Shown: one piece after another, positions 2,157-59,046 of the stretch
Numbering within the stretch: position 1 is the first letter of the stretch
Layout: the number at the start of each line of letters is the position of its first letter
From: Entomortierella parvispora E1425
Lineage: Eukaryota > Fungi > Mortierellomycota
Reading direction: 5' to 3'
Assembly (NCBI GenBank): GCA_020891255.1
Contig: BQFW01000014.1
Coordinates: 1,178,001 to 1,242,000 of the forward strand
DNA length: 64,000 nt
Notes under the pieces: model-generated
Told to the model about the DNA's origin: nothing
Databases searched by the model: none
Seen by the model: the letters and a program-made list of their open reading frames with translations, nothing else
Translations under genes and position numbers: made by a program

Positions 2157-3182
2157 ATGAACACCGACGAAGTCATCTGGCAGGTGATCAACCAGCAGTT
2201 CTGCTCTTACAAAGTCAAGTACGTTCGCATCCTCCATCCTGGTCTCATTCGTCTTTCGTAGCCGCTTGTTGTGATATCCGGCCCTCCCTCTTTTCCTCTC
2301 AACCAGGGCAAACAATACAAAGGGAAGCGTGGCTCTGGTTTTCTAATCTATACTCTCTTCATTCGTTGACTATGTCCCACCTATAGAACGGCAACTGGAA
2401 ACTTTTGCAGGAATGAATACAACGCCACTGGACTTTGCAACCGTCAATCATGCCCTCTCGCCAACTCTCGCTATGCCACCGTCCGTGAACAAAACGGTGT
2501 GATCTACCTCTTTGTAAAGACACCCGAGAGAGCACACATGCCCGCAAAGATGTGGGAGAAGATCAAGCTCTCAAAGAACTATGCTCAGGCACTGGAACAG
2601 ATTGACAAGGAGTTGATTTACTGGCCCAACTTCTCCATTCACAAGTGCAAGCAGCGTTTGACAAAGATCACCCAGTATCTCATCAAAATGCGTAAGCTGA
2701 AGCTCAAGGCAGATGAGAGACCAAAGTTGGTCGGTATCAAGAAGAAGGTCGACCGTCGCGAGGCACGGAGGGAGGTCAAGGCCGAAGCTGCGGCAAGATT
2801 GGACAAGGCCATTGAGAAGGAGTTGTTGGATCGTCTGAAGTCACACGCCTATGGCGATGCTCCTTTGAACGTACACGAGGATGTCTGGAAGGAGATCTTG
2901 GAGGGTGAGAAGGGCGCTCTGGAGGTCGACAGTGATCAGACTGACGAGGATGACTCTCAGTCAGAAGAGGAAGAAGAAGAGGAGGACGAGGATGAGGAGC
3001 GCGAGTACGTCTCTGACCAGAGCGAGGACGAGGAGGACATGGAAGATATGTTTGAGAAGGAATACGAGGTAAGAAACGATACTGGTGATTATGATATATT
3101 TGACCCAATTGAAGGCTGAAAACTGACATACCTTTTCCTTTCTCTCTCAATTGAACCACAGCACGAGACAGTGGAGCTCTAA
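2157..3182 (+). CDS. MAK16: MAK16, 60S ribosome biogenesis protein (3 exons: 2157-2218, 2387-3068, 3162-3182)
   Basis: [21 protein letters not shown] / [25 protein letters not shown] / [16 protein letters not shown], then an acidic tail. Canonical GT-AG introns. Confidence 0.95.
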
Positions 3183-3403: not shown

Positions 3404-6400
3404 ATGGTCCACGGTATCCCTAACGCTAATTCCGAGAAGACGCTCGAGGAGCTTCGGAGGGTCGTCGTGACGCTGCCACACATGCCCAAAAATATTGTCG
3501 ATGACACTCGTCATGAAAAGGTGCTTTCGTATGTGTCTGCATTCATTGCGCAAGCCGATCAACAGTTGATGCAGACCATGCTCAGGGACTGGGCCATTCT
3601 CGACGTTCTACAGGTATATTGAGTAGAGACGTTCGAGCAAAGACATTTTGGAAATGGTAGTTCTTGAAGTGGTCATATTGATAAGTATCTTTCTTCCTTA
3701 GGCCTGCTTGCAACTAGATCAGGACTATCGCGTTGGTTGTGTTGCTTTGAGGCTCCTTGGGTTTCTAATGAAATTCGATCATTCGGAACGAGAGAGCGAA
3801 GAGTCAGTGTGGGGCATGCTGGAGTCAAAGTATCCGTCGATGCTCCAGCACATGATTGACAATACCATGGGAAAGGAGGCCTTGACACGATACTCGTGCT
3901 GGTTTGCACTTGAGCGAGCTGTCCAATACGACAAAGGTGCTCAATGGTAAGCGACTGCCTGCATTATTATCCGTGCACTCCCTCGAATCCCGTTGCTCAT
4001 CTCTAAGACATATCACAGGCTTCTAGCTTCAAAAAAATGTGCCGAGATGGTATCTTCTGCCCTGAGGGACGGCAGTACATACGTAAGTTTACACCTCAAT
4101 CGAGCCAATTAGCACCAAAATGAGCATGAAATTTAATCGAAGAGTTTTATCTCTGTAGGTCTTGGCTGCCGCTTGTCAATTCTTGGTTGCCATCATCGAG
4201 AATCGAAGTGCAGATGCGGAAAAAAATACGGCACACGATACCTTAATGGATACCCTACTGGAGTCAATTGATCTCTACAAACTTATCGAAAGCATGATGA
4301 AGGATCAGAGCTCAGAAAGTAACCGTGTGGCTGGACTCGAGTTTCTATGGATGGTGACAAATACACGATCAGACAGAGGCGCAACTTTTCTTCGACAAAG
4401 TCGATTGGTAACTATTGCTTTGGTTATCAAACATACCATGTACGTACTGTGAGATGCACGACTAACCCCTGCCATCCCATAGTTCCATTCTTACATGGAC
4501 CTACTTATGGACGACTCGAGACTTGTTAGGAGTCGAGCTTTGGATGTGCTGTCAATTCTGCTTGACTCTGTCACTGATCCACTGTCGGTTCTTGGCAGAA
4601 AACCCGATAGTTTGGATAGCATGGACGCGGATATGTCCAAAGATGAAGCAATGGTGAAATGTGAGTAGAGAAGAATTAGGATAGATTTCAAGCCAATATC
4701 TACTAACCACCGTCTTTGAGTAGGTTTTGCTTATATGCTGGACCATGAAGTGTACTCCTTGTTGGCTCAAACAGAGTCCCTGAAGGCCCTGCACGTTGCG
4801 ACGGGAATCCTCGATGCGATGATTATGCCTCTTTGTCACACAGATGAAATGGATGGAAAAGGGGCACATTTCAAAGACACCATACTAGCCGTTGTACTAT
4901 GGATTCTTCAGGCGCTTCAGGATTTCAGTAAAACGGACAGCTCTACTGAGAGTCGCCCAAAAGTCGAAACTGTCATGGTACCGGGTCCAGGAAAGCTTTC
5001 GTCGTTGCTAAATGCGACGGGTTTCCAGAGCACGATGAGGACCCACAGTCGCATTAAGCCATTGCGAGGTGCCGGCACGCGAGGCGGAACTCTCCCGAAA
5101 ACGATCGTCCTATCTGCGCTGAAGGCCCTCCAGAGCTTGGCGCTTTTGTATTCGGAGTCTGTGAAAAATAGTGCAGCCATCGCCATTACGCTCTCAATTC
5201 TCTTTGATCAGAAGCTTTGCTCGGATCAGAGAGTGTTCAAGTCGTGTTTGGCGACTCTCCCCGTTGTATTGAAGACTAAAGTACAGAACGGCCAGTTGCT
5301 GGACGAACAAATATTTCACAGTGCCATGAAGGTTATCCTCGGTCTCATTCAACGTCCAGGAACAGGAAGCACATCACTGAGACTTATTCTCATCGCCATC
5401 CAAGAGTTCTTTGCGGACAGTATTCTTGGCACAATTCTTGTGAACGAGGTAGGCCCAGTTGGTATCCATAAATGTCGCATTTTAGTCATCGCGTATTAAT
5501 ATCTTGATGCTTGAATACAATAGAAAGTGGGCAATGACCTCTCGAACGGCCTTGGATTGAAGCTCTATGATATGGAGTGGGATGTCCGGGATAATGTTGT
5601 CGAATACATTGGAAACCTTTTCGCGTCGGTAAGGCTTTCAGTTACCCTTGCGGTCAATATATCCAGTGTCGTTCATTAGCTGACGGATCTTCCTTACTTA
5701 TAGGGAGGACCAGAGCATGGAGTTGAGTGGGCGCTCAAGCACGACCTTTTAGAATCCATTTTCCAAAAGCTGTCGGATGAGGAGGCGTATGTTCGAGCAG
5801 CAAGCGTCCATGCTTTCGAGCTGGTGATGCGAGACGCTCGTGGCTGGAAGGGGATGTGCGAAAAGAACTTAGACAAGCGACTGAGTGCCCAGCTGCCAAC
5901 TTTGATTCGCGATAGCGAGGCATTCGTCCGTCGAGCTGTCCTGGAGGCCATGATCTGTCTTGTGAGCGAACGCGAATCTGGAACTGTTCTTATGATTAAC
6001 GGGACTGATCTGTTTGTGGAGTGAGTTTTGCCAATGTCAGTACTGTTTTCTTAGAGAAGCAACGATGAATTCTGACAAGAGCTTTTGTATTTCCTCTGTA
6101 GTGCGACCTTCATGTCAAGACTTACTCTGGATGATGCAGACTGGGAGGTTCGTATCCGTGCCAGCGAGTTCTTGGCCGCAGTATGGGAGCATAGTATTGC
6201 TTTGGACGAGAGAGCAGATTACAGAATTCGAGCTTCCAAACGTGTCAAAGACTCTGATCGCGAAGCGCAGGATGATACGATTCCTGCACGGCCCTCTACT
6301 TGGTGGTTCTATGATATTAAAGGCGATCAGATTCTGGTGGAGGCGACGCGAGACTCGTCGAGAATGGTACGACTGACTAGCGTCGAGACACTGAAGAAGA

Positions 6401-6762
6401 TCAAGGCATCCATTGAGCAGCGTCTGCAGTTTGAGCCTATTGCCGCCCACAAAACAGATCAGCTTGAACAGAATGTCGATATGGATCATGGATCATTGCA
6501 CCAACGGAAGCGATTTGCTGGCAACGGTGAAGGTAGTGGCTCGTCTGAAGGCCAGCATATGAAGACTGGAGGTCAGTCGGGCACACATCCTCATGCTGCG
6601 TTCTACAAAGTTCTACAGGGCCTGGATTTCGAAAGACTTGATGCTACAACTTCCGTTGAGCAACTCTACGAGGAAGTTTTGAATGTTGAGCGTGTAGAGG
6701 ACGTTGTGATGGCCGAGAGCGAAAATCCAAATGATGGCAACAATGTTCTGGACTGTTACTGA
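3404..6762 (+). CDS. BRAT1: BRAT1-like ARM/HEAT-repeat protein, ~9 exons, ending in DCY*
   Basis: Spliced product contains WDVRDNVVEYI, KLSDEEAYVRAASV, DSEAFVRRAVL, DADWEVR and terminal VLDCY. These match recalled BRAT1 motifs WEVRDSALEFL, QDPESYVRASAV, DSEGFPRRAVM, DWEVR and terminal DCY in the same order. Start codon is approximate. Confidence 0.85.
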
Positions 6763-7172
6763 GCTGTTTTGGAATAAAAGCAAAAGAACCGCTCCCTCTG
6801 TTTGTTCCCCACCCCCCTGCTTCCTTGTTGTGCATGAAGATAGGATGGACAATCCACCCTCCAACCGTTTTGGACGTCTATCTCCCTTGGGCTTGTTCAG
6901 CATCTTATCTCCAGACAGCGCACAAAAAGTCCGAGGCTGCTACCATGCGCACAAGCACTCCTTCTTCGCACCATGACGATGCTGTGGGACCTTCTGACCT
7001 TGTGCACTCTACTTGTTATTACTGTGCTGACTGGCTGAGTTGCATGTCGGTGTGTAGCAGGTACATGTGGCCATGTGCACAAAGAAAGGGGAAATAGGGG
7101 CGCGAGCGCATGGGACGTGACCGGGGCGACGGATTCAGTGAACAGCACACGGACGACTGACAATGACCGCCT

Positions 7173-26201: not shown

Positions 26202-28108
26202 ATGACCAAGTTTTTGAACAAGTAAGTGATTTTCGTCTGTCATTGTGCATTCAGCCTGTCAAAGAGAAAGAGTGTCTGTCAACTTTTTATTAATACCTTG
26301 TGTTGTTTGGAATCGAAAGGTTGGTTGGAAACAGGTCACCGGGGATTCAGATGCCCTTTATCCACCACACAATCAACAGCGACTATGAGCAGTCGGACGA
26401 CATGCCCATCTACAATGTTCTTCTCATTGGTCAATCTCAATCGGGCAAGAGCACGCTTCTCGAGGCCATCAAACAATATGCCGATCCAAACTACAAATAC
26501 GACACAAGTCGGATAGGCCATGGAAATGTCTCGCTGACGACTGAGGTCCGGATCGAAGAGGTTGTTACCTGTCTACCTTCCTATCGTATCTACGAATCCA
26601 ATCGTTTTGGACGACAGGAGATTGACGTGGAACGTTATATGGAAGAGACAACCTTTGATGATTTCAAGGCCTTGTTGAACCGTCAGGATGTCGAGGTCAT
26701 GGCGGAAGGCGGAACCACCTATTCAAGGTTTCGGATCATAGACACGCCAGGACTGGATGATTCTGAAGGAAGGGATATCGAGAACCTGGGCAAGATCTTT
26801 TCGGCCATTTCGGGTCTAGGGCATTTGCACCTGGTTGTTATCACGGATCGACATGGTACCACACTTTCCCCAGGTTACCAAACAGCCCTCAAGACGTACT
26901 CGCGACTCTTTTCAAGCATGCAGGGACTCATGACCTTTGTCATGACCAGTATCCCGTACAAACAACGCCACCCTGGTCGAAAAAAGAACCTCGGATTGGA
27001 CGCCAAACTCAAAGAGAGGGCCGATATCATCTCAGAGATCATGGGCCGTCGCTTTCCATCTTTCAAGATTGATTGCAATTTGGTGGAATTTCGACCTTTT
27101 CATATCTGCCTTGTGCGAAACACTCTTCGCGATCTCCTCAGTACCGCAACGATCAAAACGCCAGTGGGATTGAAGCTACAGGTATACAAGACACCGGCCA
27201 TGAAGGCCGTAGACGAGGACGTCTACACGACTTACGCCGAGTTCTTTACCAATCTTGAACTCAACCGGGCCACGCTGGACTTGGCAGATCGACTTCGGTT
27301 GGACATCATTCAAACTGAATCGATCATTGCCAGCAAAGAGGATGAGCTCTGGACGATCGATACGGAAGAACTCCTTCACCTGTATGAAGTCCGGTTCTCT
27401 CAGGACTGGGAACATTTTTACATCATCAAACCCACTTTACTTCAATATTCAACCTTTGACTGCAGCCTCGCCGCTGGCAACTCGAACTTTCCTGCTGTCG
27501 AAATTTTGACCGATCTCGGGGACGATCTGGTACAAGTGGGTGGAGAAGCAATGGACAAGATTGAGGAGAAAGGTGGGGAAGTCGACGGGTCTGTGATCGA
27601 CAAGGTGATGACGACACATTCTTCTGTGGACATCTTGGAGGTGTCAGGGGGCGAGGAACACAAGTACTGGAGAGTCATGTTCCGGAGAAAATCTTATACA
27701 AAGGGATATTTCCATGCTATTTTGAGCATTAAGAGCTGCAACAAGTATCGTACAAGGATTGAAACCCTGAAGCAGGAGATTAGCCAGCTGAAAGAAGAGC
27801 TGGATACTCTGAAAAAAGATCGCAACAGGAGACTAATTGAGCTGGAGCTGCAAGGTGTCCCCATCACGACCGCGGTGGATCCCAAGGCCTACCAGTCTTT
27901 GCACGACCGCCTCTGCATCTATCGCAAGATGATGGAGGCTACTGAAGGTTGGTATCTCCGACTCGAGGTCTTTCTGGATCTCGCCAAGAGTGGCGTTTAT
28001 CATGGAGGATCCGCAAAGGCTAGCGCCCATGCTCTCGAACAATTTTGGGCAAACAAGCTTGGGTTCGACCCCAAAAATCATTCAACATACAAGGGACAAT
28101 CCGAATAA
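26202..28108 (+). CDS. P-loop TRAFAC GTPase (AIG1/septin/MMR_HSR1-like G domain) with C-terminal coiled coil; exon 1 26202-26221, exon 2 26335-28108
   Basis: G1 NVLLIGQSQSGKST, G2-like SLT, G3 FRIIDTPGLDD, then LHLVVI. Coiled coil RIETLKQEISQLKEELDTLKK. The intron GTAAGT..ACAG keeps frame. Confidence 0.8.
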
Positions 28109-28605
28109 ATAATGGACATAATAGCCCTCTATCCTCGCATAGTACAGCTTTGAACGAACGGACTTTGTATTTGCATGAACTGCGTTGATGATTTACTTCT
28201 TTGATGAAGCAATATTTTTCTCTCTTCCTTCAAGAGACGTGAATGCAATCAAGAGATATATGATACAAGGACATGAAGGGGAGATAGTATGGTACACAGC
28301 TGCACACAAATCTATAGACTGAAGCAAAAAAAAAAAAAAAAAAAAAAAAACTGCGAAAAGGATTGCCCCGGACATGGACGCAGTGTGTATATAGCGCACA
28401 TCGGAACCCCGTGAAATATGCTAAGTTCTTGACTGAAATAGTTGTAGGGGTATAAATGTGAGAACGCGTGCATGTCCAGCATTCGAAATGATTGAGAAAA
28501 AAGCGGAGGGAAAAAAAAGAGTAAACACGAAACAAAGTGAGAAAGAAAGACCCGGTGGACATTGACAGAATCAACGATGGCCCTTATAGAATGGCCGTCG
28601 TCGAC

Positions 28606-31027
<2,422 letters not shown>

Positions 31028-36041: not shown

Positions 36042-39000
36042 CTAGTTGGCGACATTGGGCTGGATAGACTTTGTCCTGCTGAACATGGTCTTCATGGTGG
36101 GGATCATGTTCAAGCCAATAATCTCTTCGCTCAAGGGTGTAGGACGGAATCTTCTCATGATCAAGCGACGCATGGTGGCGTAGAAGATGATAAAGACACC
36201 AAAGGCCATGGGGATCAACAGGTACAAAAACTCGGTATGGGGCGACGTGCCAAAGACCACCTTGAGACCAGGGCAGTAGACAATGAAGAAACCGAGACCA
36301 CCACCAAAGGCGAGACCGACAAACGTGCGCTTGTTCTGAAACATGTACTTTCCAAAGGGCAATCTATAACGGGTCTTGCAGGCAAACAAGTTGAACATTT
36401 GCATAATCATGATACCCAAGTAAAAGCTGGACTGGGCCTTGGCCAAGAGCTCCAGGTCCTCCGCGGTACCGTTCGCACCAAACATGTTTTTCTTCTGCAT
36501 CATCACAGCCTGTGCGGGCGAAACACCGCCTTCGTTCAACACCACAAAAAAGGTCACCAAGGCTCCGATCGTCTCAATGATACCGACTTCGAGGTAGGCC
36601 CAGGACAACAAACCGCCATCGACCAAGATCTCATCATCAGTGTGCTCAAAGCGCTCGTGCCAGTAGACAGAGGTGAACATGGCCTTGAAATCATGGTGGA
36701 ATCGAGTGAGCTTCGAAGGTGGGATCTCCTCATTGGTCTCGGGATCCAAGACAGGGGGCAAGGCACGGGTGGCGAGACGGCGGCGACGTTCGATCGAGGC
36801 AGGAGTGACGGGCTTACGGGGGAGAAGACGCATCAATCCGTAGCTGGATTCAGGGGCATCCCAGGCAAAGGTCAAAGACATGAAGAGCTCAAAACCAAGA
36901 TCAATGACCAAGATCAACATGGCAGAGATGGGTAAGGGGATGGAGGCAATGACATAGAGCAAGTTGGGAACAACCTCGGGCATCGAGTGGGTGATCGTGT
37001 ACTGGATGGACTTCTTCAAGTTGGTAAAGATAAGACGACCCTCCTCGATACCGCGGACAGTGGAAGCAAAGTTGTCGTCGAGCAAAATCATGGCGGCGGC
37101 CTCCTTGGAGACATCGGAACCAGAGATGTTCATGGCAATACCAAGATCAGCCTTCTTCAAAGCTGGGGAATCGTTCACACCATCACCGGTGACACCGACA
37201 ATGTGGCCCATGGCCTGAGCATGCTTGACAATCTGGAGCTTGTGCTTGGGCGAGGTGCGGGCAAAGATGACCTCGGGCTTGGAAAAGATCAAGTCCCAGT
37301 CCTGCTCTGTCAAAGAGTCGATCTGTTCACCATGGATAACAATAGCATTGTACTCGTCGTCGCCGACCTCATCCACAGAGCAACCGCGCTGCTTGGCCAC
37401 CAACTCCTTTGTGTCCGACAAGATCAAGTTGATCTTGCGTCCAATAGCTTCAGCGGTCAAGGGGTGATCACCAGTAACCATCATCACACGGATACCAGCA
37501 GAACGGCAGCGACCAATGGCCTCACGAACTCCGTGCTTGGGGGGATCCTCCAAAGAAACAAGACCGACAAAGGTGAGGTTGGTGGTGGGGTAGTTCTTCT
37601 TCTCCTTGTCAAAAACATGGTCATCAGGGTACTGGTCGCGTGGCAACAAGAACTGGGCAAAGGCAAGGACGCGGTGACCCTTGGAAGCCATCAGGGCATA
37701 CATGTCATCGTAGGCCTTCGAGTGCTCGATCGTCAAGGGAACAGCCTCACCGTTCATCAAGATGGTGCTGCAGAGTCTCAAGATACGTTCGGGTGCTCCC
37801 TTGATCAAAAGGGTAAACTTTCCGTTGGCGTGCTCCTTGTTGTGAATGGTCATGGCCCACTTGTTCTCAGAGTTGAAGGGGACCTCAAAGACCTTGGGGT
37901 ACAAGTCACTGAGCTGGTCAAAGTTTCCAATGTTGGCAGAGGCGAAACGGATCAAACCAGACTCAGTGGCGTCTCCCAGAACCTGACGTTCTGGAATGGG
38001 CACATCGGTACGGTCAAACTTGGCACGGGAGCAAAGGGCGGCGATGGACAAGATTTCAGGAATACCAGGCGAGGAAGCATCAAAGGGGCTACCAGCGTTG
38101 GCGGCACTACGGAAGGCCGAATACAAGTTATGGGAAGACCAGATGTTGGTCACGGTCATCTGGTTACGGGTCAATGTACCAGTCTTGTCAGTAGCGAGCA
38201 AAGTGATGGCACCAAGGGTCTCGACTCCAGTCAAGTCTTTGACCAACACGTTCTGGGCAGCCATGCGCTTGGCGGCGATGGTCAACAACATGGTCACGGT
38301 GGCAGGAAGACCCTCAGGAACCCAAGCGACAAAGATACCGATTGCAAAATTGAGGGTGCTCGAGATTCCGCCCGCCTGGGAGCGGTAGACAGCAAAGTAT
38401 CCGATGAGGAAGAAGACAATGGCAGTGGTGATGGCAATAGTAGCAATAATCTTGACAAAGTCATCGATCTCACGCGACAAGGGTGACTTTCCAGCATCCT
38501 CGCCTGCGGTCAATCCGGCAATTTGTCCCAAAACGGTGTTGTCTCCAGTGCGGATAACCAAACCATATCCTTCACCGTTGACGACCAAGGATCCGTTGAA
38601 GCAGAGGTTACGGGCCTCCAAGGGGTTCTTGTGCTCATTCACGGGGTTGCGGTCCTGGGGGTCGGTCTCTCCAGTGAGCGAAGAGTTGTCGACCTTCATG
38701 TCCGTGCAGGCAAAGATCATGATATCAGCTGGAATCTTGTCTCCCATACGCGCAAAGACAACATCGCCCAAGACCAATTCCGCGGCGGGGATTTGAATCG
38801 ACTTTCCATCACGGACAACATAACACTTCTGGGGCATCAAGTTCAAGAACGACTGCAAAACAGCGGCCGACTTTTGAGCCTGGTAAAACTCGATAGCAGC
38901 ATTGATAAAGGCGACAGCAATCAAAATAGCCCCAAGGTAAGTCTGCAAGGAGAGAGATGGAGAAGTGGAAACAGAAAACTGTGGTTAGCCCATCGCTCCT

Positions 39001-47066: not shown

Positions 47067-50000
47067 ATGCCCCTGTCCCCCCAACGGTCCCAACGGCGCC
47101 ACAAGGGTCGCCATGACTCCACCTCGTCTTCTTTGGACGATACCCCCATTCTCCTGAAAGGTGGCCACTCCTTCAACGTCGTCTCTCAGTGGTTCTTCCT
47201 CTGGGTAATCCCCCTCTTGCGCCGCACCCGGTCTGATCCAGATTTCGATTCAGAGTCGATCCAGCTACAAGAAAAAGAATCAGCCCAATATGCTGGCGAG
47301 CGTCTAGGCGATCGTTGGCAACAGGAGGAGCTTGACCACAAAGAAAAGTAAGTAATAGAATCCCTCTCTTCTTTCCTTCCCATCTGCATTTTCTCCCCTT
47401 CCCTCTATTTCTGCGGCATTCTTCTGTTCCTGGTCTAAAATCAGGCATGGCGGAGATGGGGCAGTAACCAGACAGGCAACCGAAAGGTAGATCTTGGGGC
47501 CCCCTTTGGATCTCAAAAAGGAACAAGTTCCACCCTTCGACAGGGAGACGATCGACCCTGCGCGACGTCTTCAATCCCCTATTTGCGGCAAATCTTCTGT
47601 CCTCTGGCCTTACTGCCGCCGCACCAGAGCTCACAGGTCTTTCTTTTTCCCTCCCCTGCCCCCTTCGTTTTTCCTGCCTGTCCATCTGTCTTCCTGCCTG
47701 CCTGACAACACCTTCAGATAATGACAATCCGACTGCCCCCTCTAAAAACACCTCCTGGCTCTGTTGTTCGTTACCGGGATTGCCAACAAAAGGCAATCGG
47801 CCCGTAAAGAGAGTCGAGAAAGAGGAGGGTTGCAGTTGTACGCGTGAAAAAAAAAGGAAAACGGCACAAAAATGGTCCTTGGAGTCTTTTGGGGTGGGAC
47901 CAGAATGGGTGCCTCCGTTGCCTATGGACATGTGGACTACGTTTTTGACAGGATACCCCTGCCTCGGCCTGCAGCTTCTCTGACAGTCGATGCAAAGTTC
48001 GGGGGACAGAGACGATTGCACAGGACTGGGGGAACCATAATTAGAACTTGGTGCTCCATGTGCTTTTGCGGGAAAAAGACACCCTCAAACTGGACGCATC
48101 ACGGTAGGAGAAAGGGGGTTCATCTAGGGGAAGAGGGGGCGTGTCTTTTCAATTGCGTTGCGTTGGGCGAGAGGGGAGGGAAGGGCTCATGTTTGTTTTA
48201 TCCTTCTCATGTTTGTGGTTGTCGGTCATCATCATCGAGTATGTCCACAGAGTGGACCAAGAGGACTTTTAATCGTGATATTACCAAGTCAGGGGAAATG
48301 GTGTCATTGCATCTTGGAGCTGGGGGGAACTACGAACGCCTCCGGATCCTCTCAAAATAGTGCTTCTAACAAACGACCCAATTTTTTTGTCTTCACTTCC
48401 ATCTCATCTCTTTGAAAAAATGCGCGCATTTGTTTTATTATTGTTGGCTGCGTGACCTTTAGAGCGTCCATCAGCAGAGCCTTGATGAGCGCCTTTGGGA
48501 GACCTTATCTCATGTTGGCTTTTTACAAGGTCTTCTGGATCATTTTTACGTACCTTGGCGCGTATTTCTTTGTCAAGCGGATCATCATCCATGTGGAGTC
48601 GGCGCCCGTAGTCGGTCCAGATACGAGATCTATAACGTCCGGATACCTTTACGCCCTGGGCCTCTTTCTGACTTGCGTCTGCAGCAGTGTCTGTATTCAG
48701 CAGGTTATGGCCGAGTGTACTCGGATAGGAGTTCAGGTAAAGCGTCTATTTGTAGCTTAGACTGAGGGTGTCTCTCTGAAGCATTGGGTCTGACATGCCT
48801 GTCTTTGTATTTAGGTCCGCGCTGGGCTCATGGTTTTGATCTATCGCAAATCCCTCAAATTATCTTCAGCACATGGAGGAATTGGCAACATCATCAACCT
48901 TATCTCGAACGACTGTAACCGTGTCGCAGAGTCCTTTGTCAACTTTCACTTCCTTTGGAGTTCTGCACTGGAGATCCTCGTGGTCATTGCACTGGCGTTT
49001 GTGGAACTTCAAATCGCTGCTGTGCCTGCACTGGTCATCTTGGTGCTTCTCTTCCCTGTACAGTACTTTCTCTCACTCTATACCGCCCGCGTGAACGCCA
49101 CGGCCACCAACTTGACCACAGCCAGGATCCACATCATGTCGGAGCTCCTCACTGCCATCAAGCTCATCAAATTCTACGCATGGGAATCCTACTTTCGCGA
49201 TCGTGTTACTCGCGTCAGAGCAAAGGAGATGAAAGAACTTCAGAGAGGAATGTACCTTAAGATCACCTCGTTCGCCGTCGTGTTTGCTGCGCCCGTCGTT
49301 ACGACATTGGCTTGCGTCTGTGTTTATGAGCTAACTGACAACAGGGGAGCGACTGGCAACGTCAAGGCGAGCGTCGTGTTCACGATCCTGTCATTGTTCA
49401 ACACCTTGCGCTATCCTTTGATCATGCTCCCCATTGCGGTCAAAACCACTCTAGGTGCATTCCTCAGCTTTAGTCGATTGGACGGTTTCTTGAGTCTGCC
49501 AGAAGTAGAGCCTCTTCCTCATCGCGGGGGAGAAGGCTCTGTGCAGGATTCAGACAAGGATGGCTACAGGATGACATCTGTTGTGGCGGATGGACTGGTC
49601 ATGAACGGTTCTGCCAGCAGCAGCGGAGACGCTAAAGAGATGGAACGACTTGCGCGACGTCGGGAGATTGCTCAGCTTCGGATTTATATCAAGGATGCAG
49701 ACTTTGGCTGGCCAGAGTCTCAAGAGTCGAACCCCACTCTAAAGTTTATCAGCATGAGCGTAAAGCCCAGGCAGCTAGTGGCCATTGTCGGCGATGTCGG
49801 ATCAGGAAGTATGTTTTTCTGAAAAAAGTCTGGATAGTCAGAATGATATTGTATCGATATATTAACATGTTGTCAATCTGTATTCTTTAGAATCTTCGAC
49901 ATTGGCAGCTATTATGGGTCAAATCAGATTGATGGCAGGAGACAAGGAAGTTCATGGATCATTAGCCTATGTCCCTCACGATGCCTGGCTTTTGAATGCC

Positions 50001-53000
50001 ACTCTCAAGGAAAACATTTTGTTTGGTTCACCTTTCAATCGCCAAAAGTACAACGACATTATTCGCGTTTGCGCCCTTACGCGTGATTTGACTCTCTTGA
50101 GCGCTGGCGATGAGACTGAGATTGGCGAACGAGGAATCAATTTGAGTCAGGGGCAGAGACAACGTGTTAGTTTGGCTAGAGCAGTCTATTCGGATGCCGA
50201 TATCATGCTTTTGGACGACCCTCTCAGTGGCATGGATGCTCAGGTCGGAAAGCACATTTTCCAAGAGTGCATCAAGGGCTACCTTGCCAACAAAACGATT
50301 GTCTATGTCACGAATCAACTTCAGCATCTTGCCGACTGTGACCACGTCATCGCAATGAAGGCAGGATCGATCGAGGTTCAAGGAACCTTCCAAGAGCTGA
50401 TGGCCAAGGACGTTAACTTGGCGCGTATCGTGGACGAGTCAATGGAAATCGAGGATCCGGATCAAATCCATGAGCTGATGAACGAAATTCGACTTGAGCC
50501 CACGGACGAGACGGACATTGGCTCATCAGTCACAGCGGGCACCACAGAGAAACCATTTGACAACCACCTGACAATGCCAAGGACAGTCACTATTCAGCAA
50601 GGAAGCAATGGAAAGGGCGCTAGTGCGCATTTTCCCGATTTCGAGAAAAAGTCTGAGGGTGAGGAGTTGAACAACATCAGTGTCAGAGGTCTCGCAAGCT
50701 TTGCCAAGGCTGCTGGATCTTCTGTCCATAACCGACCGAACCTTCTCTCGGCACGCTCTCACTCCATGTCGCATGCAGGAACTTCCAACAGTGCCTACAA
50801 TACTGCTGCAAATGAGCAAACCATCCACCGTCTTCGAGAACTCAATGCGCACACAATCCAAAACCAAATGCTGAACGAGCAGACTATTTCCAGGATGATC
50901 GAGCGCAATCAGATGACTATCCTTGGAAGTATGGGACAAAATCGTCTCACCTCGGCGCCTGTCAACCGTGAAGAGAACACGATGGCGAGGGCCGTGGAGC
51001 GGAATCAGTTGACAATTCACAGTTTGAGCGGTCGCGAGGGAGGTATGCTCAGTGGCGGTCGTGGCGAGAGATTGGATCTCGGCTACGGTGTTAAGAGTCG
51101 CGATGTTATTTCTGGATGGTCGGTAGCGAAGGCATACCTCCGCAAAGGCACCGGTATTGGACTCTCAGTGGCTGTGGCGCTTGTATTTTTAGCCACTCAT
51201 GGACTTCGCATCTTTTCCGACTACTGGCTCCGCTTTACTGCAGGAAAGGACGAAAAACCGGATTTCCACTATTATCTCAGTGTCTATGGTGGACTGGTAG
51301 CGGCTGTAGTGGTCGGCGCATATGGTCGTACTTTCTTCCTGTCGTGGGTCGTGTTCAAAAAGTCGTTGACCTATCACGACCGCATCTTTCGCAAGATCAT
51401 GCGAGCTCCCATGAGCTATTTTGACGTAACTCCTTTGGCTAAGATTCTGAACGCCTTTGCAAGACACCTCTATGTTGTGGATGAGGTCCTGCCTGACTCG
51501 ATCCTCCAGATGCTGCAGTACATGCCTTTGGCCATCGGAACCACCATTCTCGTGATTGTGATCGTACCTTGGTCTGCAATCACCGTGGTGGTGCTTCTTT
51601 TTTTTGTCTGGTTCCTACTTCATGCTTCCAATATCGCGGACGAACGCCTTAAGGGCATGGAAGCCGTGACAAAGGGACCTATTTTCGCGCACATGGCTGC
51701 TACCCTCGACGGCTTGTTTTCGATCCGTGTCTATGGTGCAGAGGAGCGATTTGACACCTTCAACTTGGTAAAGATTGACGACAATCACAAATCATTGTTT
51801 GCAATGATGCAAGTTCGTGCTTGGTTGGCGCTTTACCTGGATTTGGTCTCATCTCTTTTTGTGTTGGCGACTGCTATGTTTGTCATCCACTTTTCCCACG
51901 ATGGCTCCTTGGACGCATCACAAGCTGGATTGGCTATCACTAATGCCTTGCAGCTGCTCATTTTTGGTCAGTGGTCTGTTCGCATGGCTGGTGAAGTCAA
52001 GTCTACCAAGGAATCTGTCTGTCAGTTGGAACTCTATGGTATGAATATTCCCGCAGAGGCACCTGATCATATCCCCGGAAACGAACCCCCTGTTGACTGG
52101 CCAAGTCAAGGAGAGATTGAGTTCAAGAAGGTAGTCCTCCGCTACCAGAATTATGGAGTTGCTGTGCTCAAGAAGGTCAGCTTCATTGTCCGGCCGGGTG
52201 AGAAGATTGGTGTGGTCGGAAAGATGGGTAGCGGAAAGACAACTTTGCTTATCAGTTTGCTTCGAGTCGTCGAGGCTGCAGAGGGCAAGATCTTGATTGA
52301 CAATCTGGATGTGCGCGAGATTGGCTTGCAGGACCTTCGCAGCAAGATTGCCATCATTCCTCAGGAGCCTGTACTGTTTGTTGGAACGATTCGTTCCAAC
52401 CTGGATCCTTTCCACCGCCGTACCGATCAAGAGATTTGGGCCGCCCTGGACGCCGTCCATCTCTCGGAGAACATCAAGGCCAACATGCCCGCCAAGTTGG
52501 AGACGCCCATCATTGAGAACGGACGCAACTTTTCCTTGGGTCAGCGTCAGCTGTTCTGTATTGCCCGTGCTATCCTCTTTCAGAGCAAGATTCTTGTTCT
52601 TGATGGTAAGACTTTTCAACAACACGATTACCTCTGCCGTTTGACCGACTGTTCATGACTATCGATACTCATCTTTATTATTATTATCTTGTTCCCTTTT
52701 TGTAGAGGCCACAAGTGCTGTTGATCTCCAGACGGATCTTTTGATCCAAGAAACAATCAAAAAGAACTTTGCTAATTGCACAGTTCTCATGATTGCGCAC
52801 AGACTGAATACCATTATCGAGTGCGACAAGATCCTGGTCATGGAGGATGGACGCGTCGTTGAGTTTGAGCATCCTACGAAGCTGATCGAGAACAAGGATG
52901 GCTATTTCCACAGTCTTGTCAGTCAATCAGGACCGGACTCTGTTGCTCGCCTGAAGATCATGTTGAGAGAGCATGGACAGACCGTTGATGGCGAGCCTCC

Positions 53001-55646: not shown

Positions 55647-58600
55647 ATGTCGTCAAACGCCCTGGACCATGACACGGACATGGACTCTGATTCGGCTTCA
55701 GACTCGGCCTTGACCTTTCAGCAAGGCGATATGCACACAGACCTGGACGATCTCTTGAGTGACGAGAGTGATAACGACGACCTGGTTGAAAATGAGGACG
55801 AGCTTCAAGAACTTCTTGCACGCGAGAACATTACTATCGAGCATACCGCCTTTGTGCCCTCGAAAGCTGCAGATACCAACGCCTCCGCAGCCCCTGCTGT
55901 CGCCGTCGTTGTCACCACCAGTAAGAGTCATGGAGAGCCTAACGCAGAAATATCAACAAGCACGAGACGGCCCTCTGTCGCCACTAGCAGGAGCACCGGC
56001 GAATCTCTCCAACAAACCTCAACGAGTATGATGCAGACTACGGCCTCCTCGGATCACAGGCTACTGGATACGCACCTGCTTTCTGAAGCAGGAACGTCTA
56101 GTCTCCCTACGTCGCCATGGGAAACAGAAGAGTGGATACGTCGCTTACAGGGCCACTCTCAACAGGAGCTGGGACTGGACCACGGTGTGGGTTCTTCATC
56201 ACTCGCAGCCATGTCGCAATTTGAACAAGCACCGGGACTTTCAAACGCCCTCGAGATCATGACTGGCAACAAGAGTAACACCACGGACGACAGCTCCTTC
56301 GACAGTGAAAACCTGCATATACCCATTATCAATATCGCCCATCCAGCAAGGCTGGCTGTCAGTAAAGAAGCAATGCAACAGGCGGGAGCTTATCCATCAG
56401 CGGTAGATGCCCCTGGTCCTGAGGCTCCCCCAAAGAGACGGACTAGAGGTCCCCTCAGAAAGACGAGGAGAACTCGTAAGCCTGTCTATGGACAATTCCC
56501 TATGTCTGTCTCGGATCAAGAGAATGCACTGTTAACTGCAGAGATCAAGGCACAAACGGAACGGGCCCTGGAAGTCAATCGTGCATATCAGGAAGTTCTC
56601 AAGAAGCACTTGAAGGATATTGAAGAGGCCCGCGAGCGGAATCATAAACAACGGGTACGACATTGAAAGGGGACACCACGATGATTGTTTTCCTAGGGTG
56701 CAGCAGAAAACTAATTTTTGCGCGTTCATTGTTCATAGGCTGTTATCCAAAATTTGGTAGATAGGCAGGAGCAGTTGAGAAGGGCACCAGTGCAGCTTGA
56801 CATGACAGACAAGCGGATTGGCCCTCCATACTTTGTTGATAAGAGCATGAACGTACGTTTGGTCAAGGGAAATGAATGAGCTGATTTCTACATAGGTGAT
56901 TCTAACATTCTTTTCCTTTGTTTTGTTTTCTAGACTCCACCGGACAACGAGGATACGATCAAGATTAATGAGAGACCTCTCGTGTCGAAGGGTGGTGTTA
57001 AATATTGGAACCGGGCTGAAAGGAGGAACCTTTTGATGGGTGTTATCTCAGAAAACAAGAGACTCCTCTTTGAGAAATATGTGGCAGAAGGGGATGTAAG
57101 GGCCATCGAGGCACTGTCATCTGCCCCTGACTCGGAAATGACTGTGAATACCATCGGACTCAACTGGGAACGTATTTCCAGACAATTTGTAGGTTTTTTT
57201 TTTTTGAATGATATGTACCGCATAGAGGAGGGTTTACCCGCTTCAGGTATTTTAACAATGTGCTCATCGTTTTAAACTTATTGTACCTTTTAGGTCGTGA
57301 CACGGACGCCAGCAGAGTGTCTCATCCACTGGACTGGTCGCAGCCATCCCGGTATCAACAAAACAGTCTGGGAAACGAGAGAACTTCATCAGCTTGAGCG
57401 ATTGGTAACAAAATACAACGGTCGTAACTGGATCCAGATCGCCTTAGAATTGGATACCAATCGAACTGCAGCCCAATGCTTCCGCATGTACAACTCGAGA
57501 TTGAACAAGACCTTTTCTACCGAGTAAGTGGCTCGAGAACAGACCGGGTGCAGGAACCAAAGGGAACGCGAGACCGGCGCTCTAACTGACCATCTCATTT
57601 TTTTTTAGAATGTGGACCCAAGAAGAGGACAATGTTTTATTGGAGGCAGTTCGGTTGATCGGAGACAGGGATTGGAAAAAGATTTCGTATTGCTTTGAGA
57701 ATCGGTCCCCTGCTCAATGTCGGGTTCGTTGGGGCAAGGTGGTCTGCCCTTATAATCGGCGAGGCAAATGGCTTGAGGACGAAGATGAGGCCCTTAAAGC
57801 AGCCATGGTCCTCTTTGGAGACAAAGGGTGGGTACGGGTTCAGGAGCACGTGCCCGGCAGGACAGATGTCCAATGCCGTGAACGTTACTGTGACTATTTG
57901 GACCCATCCCTGAATCATGGACCATGGAGTGCAGACGATATTCAAAAGCTACGAGATTTGGTCAAGGAGTATGGCACTGCGAGATGGTCTGAAATCGCAG
58001 CGAAGCTTGAGGGCAGGACTGATAATAATGTCGCTCGCAGGTGGAGGATGTTGGTCAGGGAGGATGAGCAGGCCGCTCGCCAAGCGGCAAAAGCAGCCGA
58101 CCCCACTGAGGAAGCCAACCGACCGAAACGAAAGTATCTGTCTTTTAGTCGTCGGAAAGGACAATCGACCTCTGCGGCCAAACCCAACTTGAAAGAACAT
58201 CGCGAGGAGATCCGGAGACTTGCCCGTCTAATACAATCACAGGATCAAAGAGACCGGGAAAAGAAGGCTGTCTTGGAGCAGTACCGGCGACGACTTCGGG
58301 GTATGCAATCACAAGAGATTCAGCGGTACTATGAAGATGCAACAGAGAAACAGCGCGAAGTCTACGACGCTTGGGAGGAAGCCTGGCCTGAGGAAATGGA
58401 CCCCATCGAAAAGGTTTTCAACCTTGGCATTCCCCCTGTGATTTCAAAGACCGGCAAGCGGAAACGAGACGGATTCGAGCACGATGACGAGCTCGAGAAT
58501 GAGGAGGATGATGGTGAAAGTGGAGACGAAGAGTCAAAGGAAGAGACGCCGGAAGAGCTGCAGCAGAAGCTAAAGGTGCAGGAAGCAAAGGAGATGAAGC

Positions 58601-59046
58601 GACTCGAACAAGCGTACGAGGATGTTCAGGCAGTCATCAAACCGAAAGTGCCAGATGCAGCGTCTGTCATAACACCTGGTTTGATCCGTCCAGCTCCACC
58701 CTGTGTCGCGACTATGGAGGCATTTTCCAATGTTCTTGATCAAGGAGAAATGCTCGGGGGTCGTTTCCGCCTGAAAAAGACTGTCGAAAAGGATGAGTTC
58801 AAGATTCGACCATTACCCTGCGACATTTTGTCACCTCAGGACCAGATGAGACCCGAGTACAGGGAACTGGCAGAACGATTCGAGGCCACGTTTATGTGGC
58901 CCATGTTGATGGGGATGCTTGATCAAGAGACAGGACACTCTGAGCTGAACCTGCGCTCAGGGAGAAAGTTCCGCGGTCTAAAGAAGGAGGACAGTTCGAG
59001 CACCAATGGCGGGGTATCCCGATCTCCTTCTGTCTATCCTGAATAG
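55647..59046 (+). CDS. SNAPC4: Myb-repeat protein, SNAPC4/SNAP190-like (about 4.5 Myb repeats)
   Basis: ALEVNRAYQEVL coiled coil, GPPYFVDK..PPDNED, a half repeat and then four repeats (RTPAECLIHW..HPGINK.VW, RTAAQC, RSPAQCRVRW..RGKW, GRTDVQCRERY..LDPSLNHGPW, GRTDNNVARRW). This is the architecture I recall for SNAPC4. Confidence 0.78.

What the first reader, a model, noticed from the sequence alone, without database searches (positions are those of the whole stretch)
3404..6762. Fungal BRAT1 orthologue retaining the C-terminal DCY plug, implying an Integrator endonuclease in this fungus
Seen: an ARM-repeat gene with four BRAT1-like motifs in order and a terminal Asp-Cys-Tyr-stop (6751-6762). 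Established: metazoan BRAT1 chaperones the INTS9-INTS11 nuclease module, and its terminal Cys inserts into the INTS11 metal site. Budding yeast lacks Integrator and ends snRNAs via Nrd1-Nab3-Sen1/Rnt1. Inference: exact conservation of the plug suggests a working INTS11 partner and Integrator-type RNA 3' processing in an early-diverging fungus. I cannot tell whether this is already annotated.
Basis: partly seen in the sequence, partly recalled or inferred. Interest (0 to 1): 0.75.

Follow-up and report, generated by a model that had tools for sequence, protein, structure and literature searches.

The report
Fungal BRAT1 gene with DCY tail
This soil fungus has an intact gene for BRAT1, the helper protein that in animals escorts and plugs the RNA-cutting enzyme INTS11. 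The enzyme is annotated in the same species, but sister species already carry both labels in GenBank, so this adds a member and not a new kind.

Summary
A nine-exon gene on the + strand (3404-6762, 917 codons) encodes a HEAT/ARM-repeat protein ending in Asp-Cys-Tyr-stop at 6751-6762.

**It is a BRAT1 orthologue.**
- A profile of 24 fungal homologues hits human BRAT1 first in the PDB (E 1e-31).
- That profile aligns collinearly over 706 columns with frog BRAT1 (99.2 % probability).
- An AlphaFold model of the Mortierella alpina orthologue has the four BRAT1 chains as its top four PDB matches.
- Human BRAT1 ends ...EADCY and frog BRAT1 ends ...DADCY.
- Of 87 fungal relatives that keep the tail motif, 72 end in (D/E)-C-Y.

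**The partner exists.** GenBank holds "integrator complex subunit 11 [Entomortierella parvispora]" (GJJ75832.1). It scores 832 bits against human INTS11 and 367 bits against CPSF73.

**Not tested.** INTS9 and INTS4 were not searched for, and binding and expression were not tested.

**Novelty is low.** About 25 Mortierellaceae orthologues are already named "BRCA1-associated ATM activator 1". I found no held paper that discusses Integrator in early-diverging fungi.

The scan had not noted BRAT1 before. It had noted INTS13 and an ICE1-like gene elsewhere in this genome.

The joined spliced protein was never sent to a search or fold tool. Exons were searched one by one, by reference.

The parts
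3404..3613 (+). Exon 1 (70 codons), start ATG at 3404. Holds the N-terminal BRAT1 motif IVDDTRHEKVLSY at 3494-3532.
   Evidence: It aligns to residues 1-70 of P0037. The motif aligns to human BRAT1 23-35, VADDTCLEKLLDW.
3702..3946 (+). Exon 2. It ends in phase 2, and its last codon is completed by G4019.
   Evidence: It aligns to P0037 71-156.
4019..4082 (+). Exon 3
   Evidence: It aligns to P0037 158-178.
4159..4407 (+). Exon 4. The donor is GTAACT.
   Evidence: It aligns to P0037 179-261.
4483..4660 (+). Exon 5, with the motif DDSRLVRSRALDVL
   Evidence: It aligns to P0037 262-318. The motif appears in the family consensus.
4724..5448 (+). Exon 6, the largest. It covers the middle of the solenoid and a probably disordered linker.
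   Evidence: It aligns to P0037 322-562. The matching stretches of the P0001 model have low pLDDT.
5524..5628 (+). Exon 7. It holds the motif WDVRDNVVEYIGNLF at 5578-5622. Glu 5602-5604 aligns with human Glu522.
   Evidence: BLASTP against frog BRAT1 509-525, E 2e-4. PMC11161795 reports that E522K abolishes binding of INTS9/INTS11.
5704..6020 (+). Exon 8. It holds two HEAT motifs: LSDEEAYVRAASVHA at 5770-5814 and IRDSEAFVRRAVLEA at 5905-5949.
   Evidence: Pfam HEAT E 4.4e-5. BLASTP against frog BRAT1 533-612, E 2e-4. Human counterparts are DPESYVRASAVTA and DSEGFPRRAVMQV.
6102..6762 (+). Exon 9 with the stop codon. It holds the HEAT motif LDDADWEVRIRASEFL at 6127-6174.
   Evidence: Pfam HEAT. 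It aligns to P0037 704-920, to the last residue. phmmer against 1.84 billion representative proteins gave 34 hits, most of which align the end of the query to the protein's own C-terminus.
6622..6759 (+). Conserved C-terminal tail, LDFERLDATTSVEQLYEEVLNVERVEDVVMAESENPNDGNNVLDCY
   Evidence: In alignment A1, N882 and C886 are invariant. G880, L884 and Y887 are at least 90 % conserved. The tail has pLDDT below 50 in the monomer model of P0001, so it looks free in isolation.
6751..6762 (+). Asp-Cys-Tyr-stop, the candidate active-site plug
   Evidence: Human BRAT1 ends EADCY at residue 821 and frog BRAT1 ends DADCY.
6773..6778 (+). AATAAA, a likely polyadenylation signal 11 nt after the stop
   Evidence: Read. 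This is a consensus match only.

Best explanation
The gene encodes the Mortierellaceae orthologue of BRAT1, the assembly chaperone and temporary inhibitor of the Integrator nuclease pair INTS9-INTS11.

**Shown here.**
- The gene has an intact nine-exon reading frame.
- It is homologous to animal BRAT1 over its full length.
- It keeps the residue equivalent to human Glu522.
- Its terminal -Asp-Cys-Tyr-COOH is identical to the human and frog ends.
- That end sits on a tail that is conserved from chytrids to Mortierella and looks disordered in the monomer model.
- An INTS11 orthologue is annotated in Entomortierella parvispora. It is about 70 % identical to human INTS11 over the catalytic domains, by my estimate from the printed alignment. 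Every motif I checked is identical: HFHLDH, AGHVLG, YTGDYN, ESTYA, FSAHAD and LVHGE.

**Inferred, by analogy with the human and fly complexes (PDB 8UIB, 8UIC, 8R22, 8R23).**
- The HEAT solenoid wraps the INTS9-INTS11 dimer in the cytoplasm.
- The free tail reaches into the cleft between the metallo-beta-lactamase and beta-CASP domains.
- The Cys thiolate binds the two zinc ions, so the nuclease stays silent until nuclear import.
- In the nucleus BRAT1 is exchanged for INTS4.

If so, this fungus runs an Integrator-type cleavage module that budding yeast lacks.
For: - **Profile against the PDB.** Human BRAT1 at 1.1e-31, fly dBRAT1 at 1.5e-12, INTS4 about 5e-9.
- **Large protein database.** Frog BRAT1 at 1.9e-34. 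The next non-family protein is at 6.7e-5.
- **hhalign.** 99.2 % probability, E 8e-20, 706 columns, positions 26-795 against 23-793.
- **Structure.** AlphaFold model of the orthologue P0001 has pLDDT 78.5 and pTM 0.71. Foldseek ranks 1-4 are all BRAT1 chains, with TM 0.47-0.64.
- **Tails.** Of 87 relatives with the tail motif, 59 end DCY, 13 end ECY, 8 end DCY plus one residue, and 2 chytrids end xCYDC.
- **Exon collinearity.**
- **INTS11.** P0107 is from E. parvispora and scores 832 bits against INTS11 versus 367 bits against CPSF73. About 55 Mortierellaceae entries are named Integrator complex subunit 11.
- **Literature.** The bioRxiv paper 10.1101/2025.03.05.641556 states that BRAT1 blocks the INTS11 active site and escorts the dimer. 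PMC11161795 reports the E522K effect.
- **Earlier scan notes (not checked by me).** INTS13 and an ICE1-like gene are noted in the same genome.
Against: - No expression data: no RNA run was listed.
- No binding data, and no multimer model could be made.
- INTS9, INTS4 and WDR73 were not searched for.
- Outside the last three residues, the fungal tail (GNN[IV]L[DE]CY) does not resemble the vertebrate tail (...(D/E)ADCY).
- The detail that the Cys coordinates the metals comes from my memory of Lin et al. 2024 (Mol Cell). That paper is not held in the library.
- The species assignment of the window rests on earlier scan notes. This species' own BRAT1 record did not appear.
- Single exons against the PDB give only designed HEAT proteins. 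Homology is visible only at profile level.
Confidence: 0.85

Rival explanations
1. It is a true BRAT1 orthologue, but its main job in the fungus is not Integrator assembly. It could act in the DNA-damage/ATM pathway that gave BRAT1 its name. Alternatively, its tail could plug the other beta-CASP nuclease, CPSF73/Ysh1.
For: - BRAT1 was first described as a BRCA1/ATM partner (background in PMC11161795).
- The same window and genome hold Fanconi-anaemia genes, according to unchecked scan notes.
- CPSF73 and INTS11 share their active-site motifs.
Against: - INTS11 is present and highly conserved in the species.
- All fungal BRAT1 hits whose taxon I looked up come from non-Dikarya lineages. The top 120 INTS11 hits come from most of the same lineages.
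- In animals CPSF73 has its own partner, UBE3D/Ipa1 (titles).
- The Glu522 equivalent, which is needed for INTS9/11 binding, is kept.
Confidence: 0.1
2. It is an unrelated HEAT-repeat protein that resembles BRAT1 only through generic repeat similarity, and the terminal DCY is coincidence.
For: - Pfam gives only generic HEAT hits.
- Single exons hit only designed alphaRep proteins in the PDB.
- Designed HEAT proteins also score well against the family profile, at 9e-18.
Against: - BRAT1 beats every other natural protein by more than 20 orders of magnitude.
- The alignment is full-length and collinear, including the non-HEAT N-terminal motif.
- The four best structural matches are all BRAT1.
- The CY end is kept in 82 of 87 relatives.
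- An independent annotation pipeline at NCBI named the orthologues BRAT1.
Confidence: 0.02
3. BRAT1 and INTS11 are retained, but the fungal Integrator is a reduced or repurposed remnant. It might be a cleavage module used for general transcription attenuation, while snRNA 3' ends are still made by a yeast-type route.
For: - Only INTS11 (shown here) and INTS13 (an unchecked scan note) are known for this genome.
- Plants use divergent Integrator-like complexes (mentioned in PMC8938319).
Against: - Nothing here speaks directly against it.
- An ICE1-like gene, which points to animal-type snRNA transcription, is noted in the same genome (unchecked).
Confidence: 0.25

Closest known systems
Human BRAT1 (BRCA1-associated ATM activator 1; PDB 8UIB chain T, 8R22/8R23/8R2D chain A)
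   Same: - It is a HEAT/ARM solenoid of similar length, 821 aa against 917 aa.
- The alignment is collinear over the full length.
- The motifs DDT..EK.L, WEVRD..LEF, D.E.YVRAS, DSE.F.RRA and D.DWEV are shared.
- The Glu522 equivalent is kept.
- The last three residues, Asp-Cys-Tyr, are identical.
   Different: - Identity is only about 17-18 %.
- The fungal tail carries a longer conserved motif, EQLYEEVL...NDGNNVLDCY, which is absent in vertebrates.
- The fungal protein has extra low-complexity inserts.
Drosophila dBRAT1 (CG7044; PDB 8UIC chain T)
   Same: The fold is the same, and it is bound to IntS11 in the solved complex. It is Foldseek rank 4 and hits the family profile at 1.5e-12.
   Different: It is longer, at 974 aa, and more divergent. 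I did not see its C-terminus.
Mortierellaceae proteins named 'BRCA1-associated ATM activator 1' in GenBank, for example Dissophora ornata P0037 and Mortierella alpina P0001
   Same: They are direct orthologues: 72.5 % identity to P0037, the same exon-collinear layout and the same NDGNNVLDCY end.
   Different: They come from other species. No record for the window's own species appeared in my searches.
INTS4
   Same: It is a HEAT-repeat partner of INTS9-INTS11, and it is the best natural non-BRAT1 hit of the family profile, at about 5e-9. It binds an overlapping surface (PMC11161795).
   Different: It is a stable Integrator subunit and not a chaperone. I know of no terminal Cys plug in it.
UBE3D / yeast Ipa1
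   Same: It is the cytoplasmic partner of the paralogous nuclease CPSF73/Ysh1, and so is functionally analogous (papers listed).
   Different: It has an unrelated HECT-like fold. This comparison rests on my own knowledge and was not tested here.

Membership tests
BRAT1 | Full-length, collinear sequence homology to animal BRAT1, with BRAT1 as the best hit | tested here: met
   The family profile against the PDB puts human BRAT1 first at 1.1e-31. Frog BRAT1 scores 1.9e-34. hhalign gives 99.2 % probability over 706 columns. The window's exons are collinear with family members and with frog BRAT1.
BRAT1 | Alpha-solenoid of HEAT/ARM repeats whose closest solved fold is BRAT1 | tested here: met
   This was tested on the orthologue P0001 and not on the window protein itself. 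The model has pLDDT 78.5. Foldseek ranks 1-4 are 8r23_A, 8r22_A, 8uib_T and 8uic_T. Pfam HEAT hits fall in window exons 7-9.
BRAT1 | C-terminus ending in Cys-Tyr preceded by an acidic residue (human D819-C820-Y821) | tested here: met
   The window has GAC-TGT-TAC-TGA at 6751-6762. Human BRAT1 ends ...EADCY at residue 821. Frog BRAT1 ends ...DADCY. Of 87 fungal relatives, 72 end in (D/E)CY.
BRAT1 | Conserved Glu equivalent to human E522, which is needed for INTS9/INTS11 binding | tested here: met
   Human WEVRDSALEF aligns to window WDVRDNVVEY, with the Glu at 5602-5604. The role of E522K is reported in PMC11161795.
BRAT1 | Physical binding to INTS9-INTS11, with the terminal Cys in the INTS11 metal site | not testable with these tools
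   No multimer prediction is available and there are no experiments.
BRAT1 | Co-occurrence with an INTS11 orthologue in the same organism | tested here: met
   P0107 (GJJ75832.1, E. parvispora) scores 832 bits against human INTS11 and 367 bits against CPSF73. The link from the window to that species rests on earlier scan notes. Every Mortierellaceae genus that appears has an INTS11.
Integrator cleavage module | INTS9 and INTS4 present alongside INTS11 | not tested
INTS11 (for the partner P0107) | [quoted passage not shown] | tested here: met
   Precomputed Pfam domains are listed. The alignment to 7cun_K over residues 3-466 shows HFHLDH, AGHVLG, YTGDYN, ESTYA, FSAHAD and LVHGE all identical. 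Many Mortierellaceae orthologues carry IntS11_C, PF21386.

The most novel reading that the evidence does not exclude
Early-diverging fungi (chytrids, Kickxellomycotina, Glomeromycota, Mucoromycota, Mortierellomycota) keep a working Integrator cleavage module chaperoned by BRAT1. Its plug is a fungus-specific extended tail, GNN[IV]L[DE]CY. On this reading, Integrator-dependent RNA 3' processing was lost within fungi only on the way to Dikarya. Mortierella-type fungi could then serve as a simple fungal model for a complex that is usually called metazoan-specific.
Probability: 0.6. Interest if true: 0.5.

Novelty: new member of a known kind. Interest (0 to 1): 0.3.

Why it matters
Papers still describe Integrator as metazoan-specific or as conserved in metazoans (PMC13335351; PMC11161795). 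Yeast, the usual fungal model, lacks it.

This gene, together with the INTS11 annotated in the same species, shows that the nuclease and its dedicated chaperone both survive in an early-branching fungal lineage. Even the three-residue plug is kept.

That makes the plug mechanism look ancient. It also offers a microbial system in which BRAT1 function could be studied. BRAT1 is mutated in lethal human neurodevelopmental disease.

The gain is modest. Automatic annotation already names the orthologues in sister species, so what is new is mainly the comparative picture of the tail.

Tried and rejected
- **Pfam on single exons and on whole orthologues and frog BRAT1.** Only generic HEAT families came up. 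This Pfam copy has no BRAT1 model, so Pfam cannot decide membership.
- **phmmer of exons 6, 8 and 9 against the PDB.** Only designed alphaRep proteins and noise came up. A family profile was needed.
- **RNA evidence.** No sequencing run was listed, so read laying was not used and the splice model is not supported by reads.
- **Literature.** None found a held paper on Integrator or BRAT1 in early-diverging fungi. Lin et al. 2024 and Sabath et al. 2024 are not held.
- **Exact look-up of four window ORFs.** None is in the collection, so I could not confirm the species myself.
- **This species' own BRAT1 record.** It did not appear.
- **Route to INTS11.** It served only to fetch loci, and everything taken from it was checked afterwards. 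I took none of the 120 metagenome loci for human. The motif context I compared does not match human INTS11, and the other loci did not look like human genes from my memory of CPSF73.
- **Rejected readings.** A generic HEAT protein with a chance DCY, and a pseudogene. The frame is intact, the splice sites are canonical and identity to orthologues is 72 %.
Full report
**1. What is in the sequence**

Between 3404 and 6762 on the + strand lies a nine-exon gene. The exons are 3404-3613, 3702-3946, 4019-4082, 4159-4407, 4483-4660, 4724-5448, 5524-5628, 5704-6020 and 6102-6762. Every intron is GT..AG and 73-88 nt long. The coding sequence is 2754 nt, which gives 917 codons plus TGA.

The last codons are GAC (6751), TGT (6754), TAC (6757) and TGA (6760). 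AATAAA follows at 6773-6778.

I checked the model without joining the exons. Each exon translation aligns to consecutive stretches of the 920-aa Dissophora ornata protein P0037, from residue 1 to residue 920. Overall 657 of 906 aligned residues are identical (tblastn). The upstream neighbour is MAK16.

No RNA run was listed for this stretch, so the model rests on orthologue collinearity and not on reads.

**2. What it is**

Pfam sees only generic HEAT repeats in exons 7-9. Single exons hit only designed HEAT proteins in the PDB.

The last exon was searched alone against 1.84 billion representative proteins. It found 34 relatives, most of which align the end of the query to their own C-terminus. 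Their tails share the motif ...EHLYQEALD..VE..LM.E....N.GNN(I/V)LDCY.

I built a profile from 24 full-length relatives (alignment A1). Several tests on this family point to BRAT1:
- Against all PDB sequences, the profile puts human BRAT1 first (8uib_T and 8r22_A, E 1.1e-31). Fly dBRAT1 scores 1.5e-12. The best natural non-BRAT1 protein is INTS4, at about 5e-9.
- In the 5.8-billion-protein collection, the profile finds frog BRAT1 at 1.9e-34. The next outsider scores 6.7e-5.
- Profile-to-sequence alignment with frog BRAT1 gives 99.2 % probability and E 8e-20. It covers 706 collinear columns, positions 26-795 against 23-793.
- The window's own exons align to frog BRAT1 in the same order. The hits are weak singly: E 2e-4 for exon 7 and for exon 8.
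- An AlphaFold model of the Mortierella alpina orthologue P0001 has pLDDT 78.5 and pTM 0.71. Its top four Foldseek matches in the PDB are the four BRAT1 chains: 8r23_A, 8r22_A, 8uib_T and 8uic_T.

GenBank already names about 25 Mortierellaceae orthologues "BRCA1-associated ATM activator 1".

**3. The tail**

Human BRAT1 ends ...GDEADCY at residue 821. Frog BRAT1 ends ...HDADCY. The window protein ends ...NDGNNVLDCY.

Among 87 fungal relatives that keep the tail motif:
- 59 end in DCY and 13 in ECY;
- 8 end in DCY plus one more residue;
- 2 chytrids end in xCYDC;
- 5 lack the end, probably through gene-model errors. For example, P0058 differs from P0037 of the same species only in the last stretch.

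In alignment A1 the Cys and one Asn of the tail are invariant. The tail is predicted disordered in the monomer model, as expected for a segment that docks into a partner.

Human Glu522 is also kept. Its E522K change abolishes INTS9/INTS11 binding (PMC11161795). Human WEVRDSALEF aligns to window WDVRDNVVEY.

**4. The partner**

No INTS11 sequence was available by reference. I therefore scanned metagenome contigs with a short degenerate pattern for the beta-CASP motif HFHLDHCGALP.

One soil contig, L106, carries a 650-aa open frame with Lactamase_B_6, Beta-Casp and RMMBL domains. Used as a query, it returned 120 listed relatives, and every one that carries an organism name is from an early-diverging fungus. 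About 55 are Mortierellaceae entries named "Integrator complex subunit 11".

Among them is P0107, which is GJJ75832.1, "integrator complex subunit 11 [Entomortierella parvispora]". Against the PDB:
- P0107 matches human INTS11 at E 2.7e-249 and 832 bits, over residues 3-466 against 4-467;
- it scores 367 bits against CPSF73 and 304 bits against yeast Ysh1;
- every catalytic motif I checked is identical to the human one.

The species name for this genome comes from earlier scan notes, and I could not confirm it myself. My own data place the window within Mortierellaceae, and every Mortierellaceae genus that appears has an INTS11.

**5. Distribution**

I looked up the taxon of 30 of the 34 BRAT1 representatives. 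One has no name, and P0001 and P0003 carry names. All named ones are non-Dikarya fungi:
- Mortierellomycota;
- Glomeromycota (Gigaspora, Acaulospora, Ambispora);
- Endogonales (Jimgerdemannia);
- Calcarisporiella;
- Mucorales (Spinellus);
- Kickxellales and Dimargaritales (Coemansia, Kickxella, Linderina, Spiromyces, Dispira, Dimargaris);
- chytrids (Chytriomyces, Obelidium).

INTS11 appeared in most of the same lineages. Coemansia and the chytrids were not in its top 120, but the list is truncated there.

**6. How it most likely works**

Sections 1-5 are shown. The mechanism below is inferred from the animal complexes.

BRAT1 binds INTS9-INTS11, blocks the INTS11 active site and escorts the dimer to the nucleus, where INTS4 replaces it. 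The bioRxiv paper 10.1101/2025.03.05.641556 says so, citing Sabath et al. 2024. The PDB holds the complexes 8UIB, 8UIC, 8R22 and 8R23.

The detail that the terminal Cys coordinates the metal ions is my recollection of Lin et al. 2024, which is not held.

**7. Novelty and score**

The finding is correct but adds a member to a known family. Sister-species orthologues of BRAT1 and INTS11 are already named in GenBank. [quoted passage not shown] I found no held paper on Integrator in early-diverging fungi.

Two things appear not to have been described in the held literature:
- the plug is kept from chytrids to humans;
- fungi have their own extended tail motif.

**8. Limits**

Exons were used by reference, and orthologues served as proxies.
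- INTS9 and INTS4 were not searched for, and binding and expression were not tested.

Noticed in passing
window 2499-3119 (+): The upstream neighbour encodes the C-terminal part of MAK16. Pfam gives Mak16 at 1.9e-29 and Ribosomal_L28e at 1.6e-17. This is an ordinary ribosome-biogenesis gene.
   Followed up: partly
P0024, P0027, P0014 (Chytriomyces, Obelidium): Chytrid BRAT1 relatives end in xCYDC (TCYDC, CCYDC, HCYDC) and not in DCY. That adds two residues, and a second Cys, after the Cys-Tyr. I cannot tell whether this is a real variant plug or a gene-model artefact.
   Followed up: no
P0006, P0007, P0026, P0071 (Glomeromycota); P0045, P0055, P0056 (Podila); P0005 (Spiromyces): These relatives carry one extra residue after DCY: DCYF, DCYA or DCYN. 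The terminal carboxylate of Tyr may therefore not be essential.
   Followed up: no
L067, L076, L041, L116 (metagenome contigs, GC 0.63-0.67): These beta-CASP nuclease genes have a run of about 13 glycines directly after the HFHLDHCGALP metal-binding motif. That is an odd insertion at a catalytic motif. The organism is unknown.
   Followed up: no
cluster of P0011 (Coemansia spp.): The 90 % cluster of a Coemansia BRAT1 relative also holds proteins named 'DASH complex subunit ask1' (715-718 aa) and a 1734-aa Coemansia mojavensis protein. This suggests neighbouring genes fused in some gene models.
   Followed up: no
window 26300-30504, 36045-38948, 49902-52655, 57610-59043: Other long ORFs in the window match ordinary families: a P-loop GTPase-like protein, a DEAD-box helicase, a P-type cation ATPase, an ABC transporter and a Myb-repeat protein.
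   Followed up: partly
family profile A1 against the PDB: INTS4, the subunit that replaces BRAT1 on INTS9-INTS11, is the best natural non-BRAT1 hit of the fungal BRAT1 profile, at about 5e-9 over some 335 profile positions. This may hint at common ancestry of the two HEAT partners. It may also be plain HEAT-repeat similarity.
   Followed up: no
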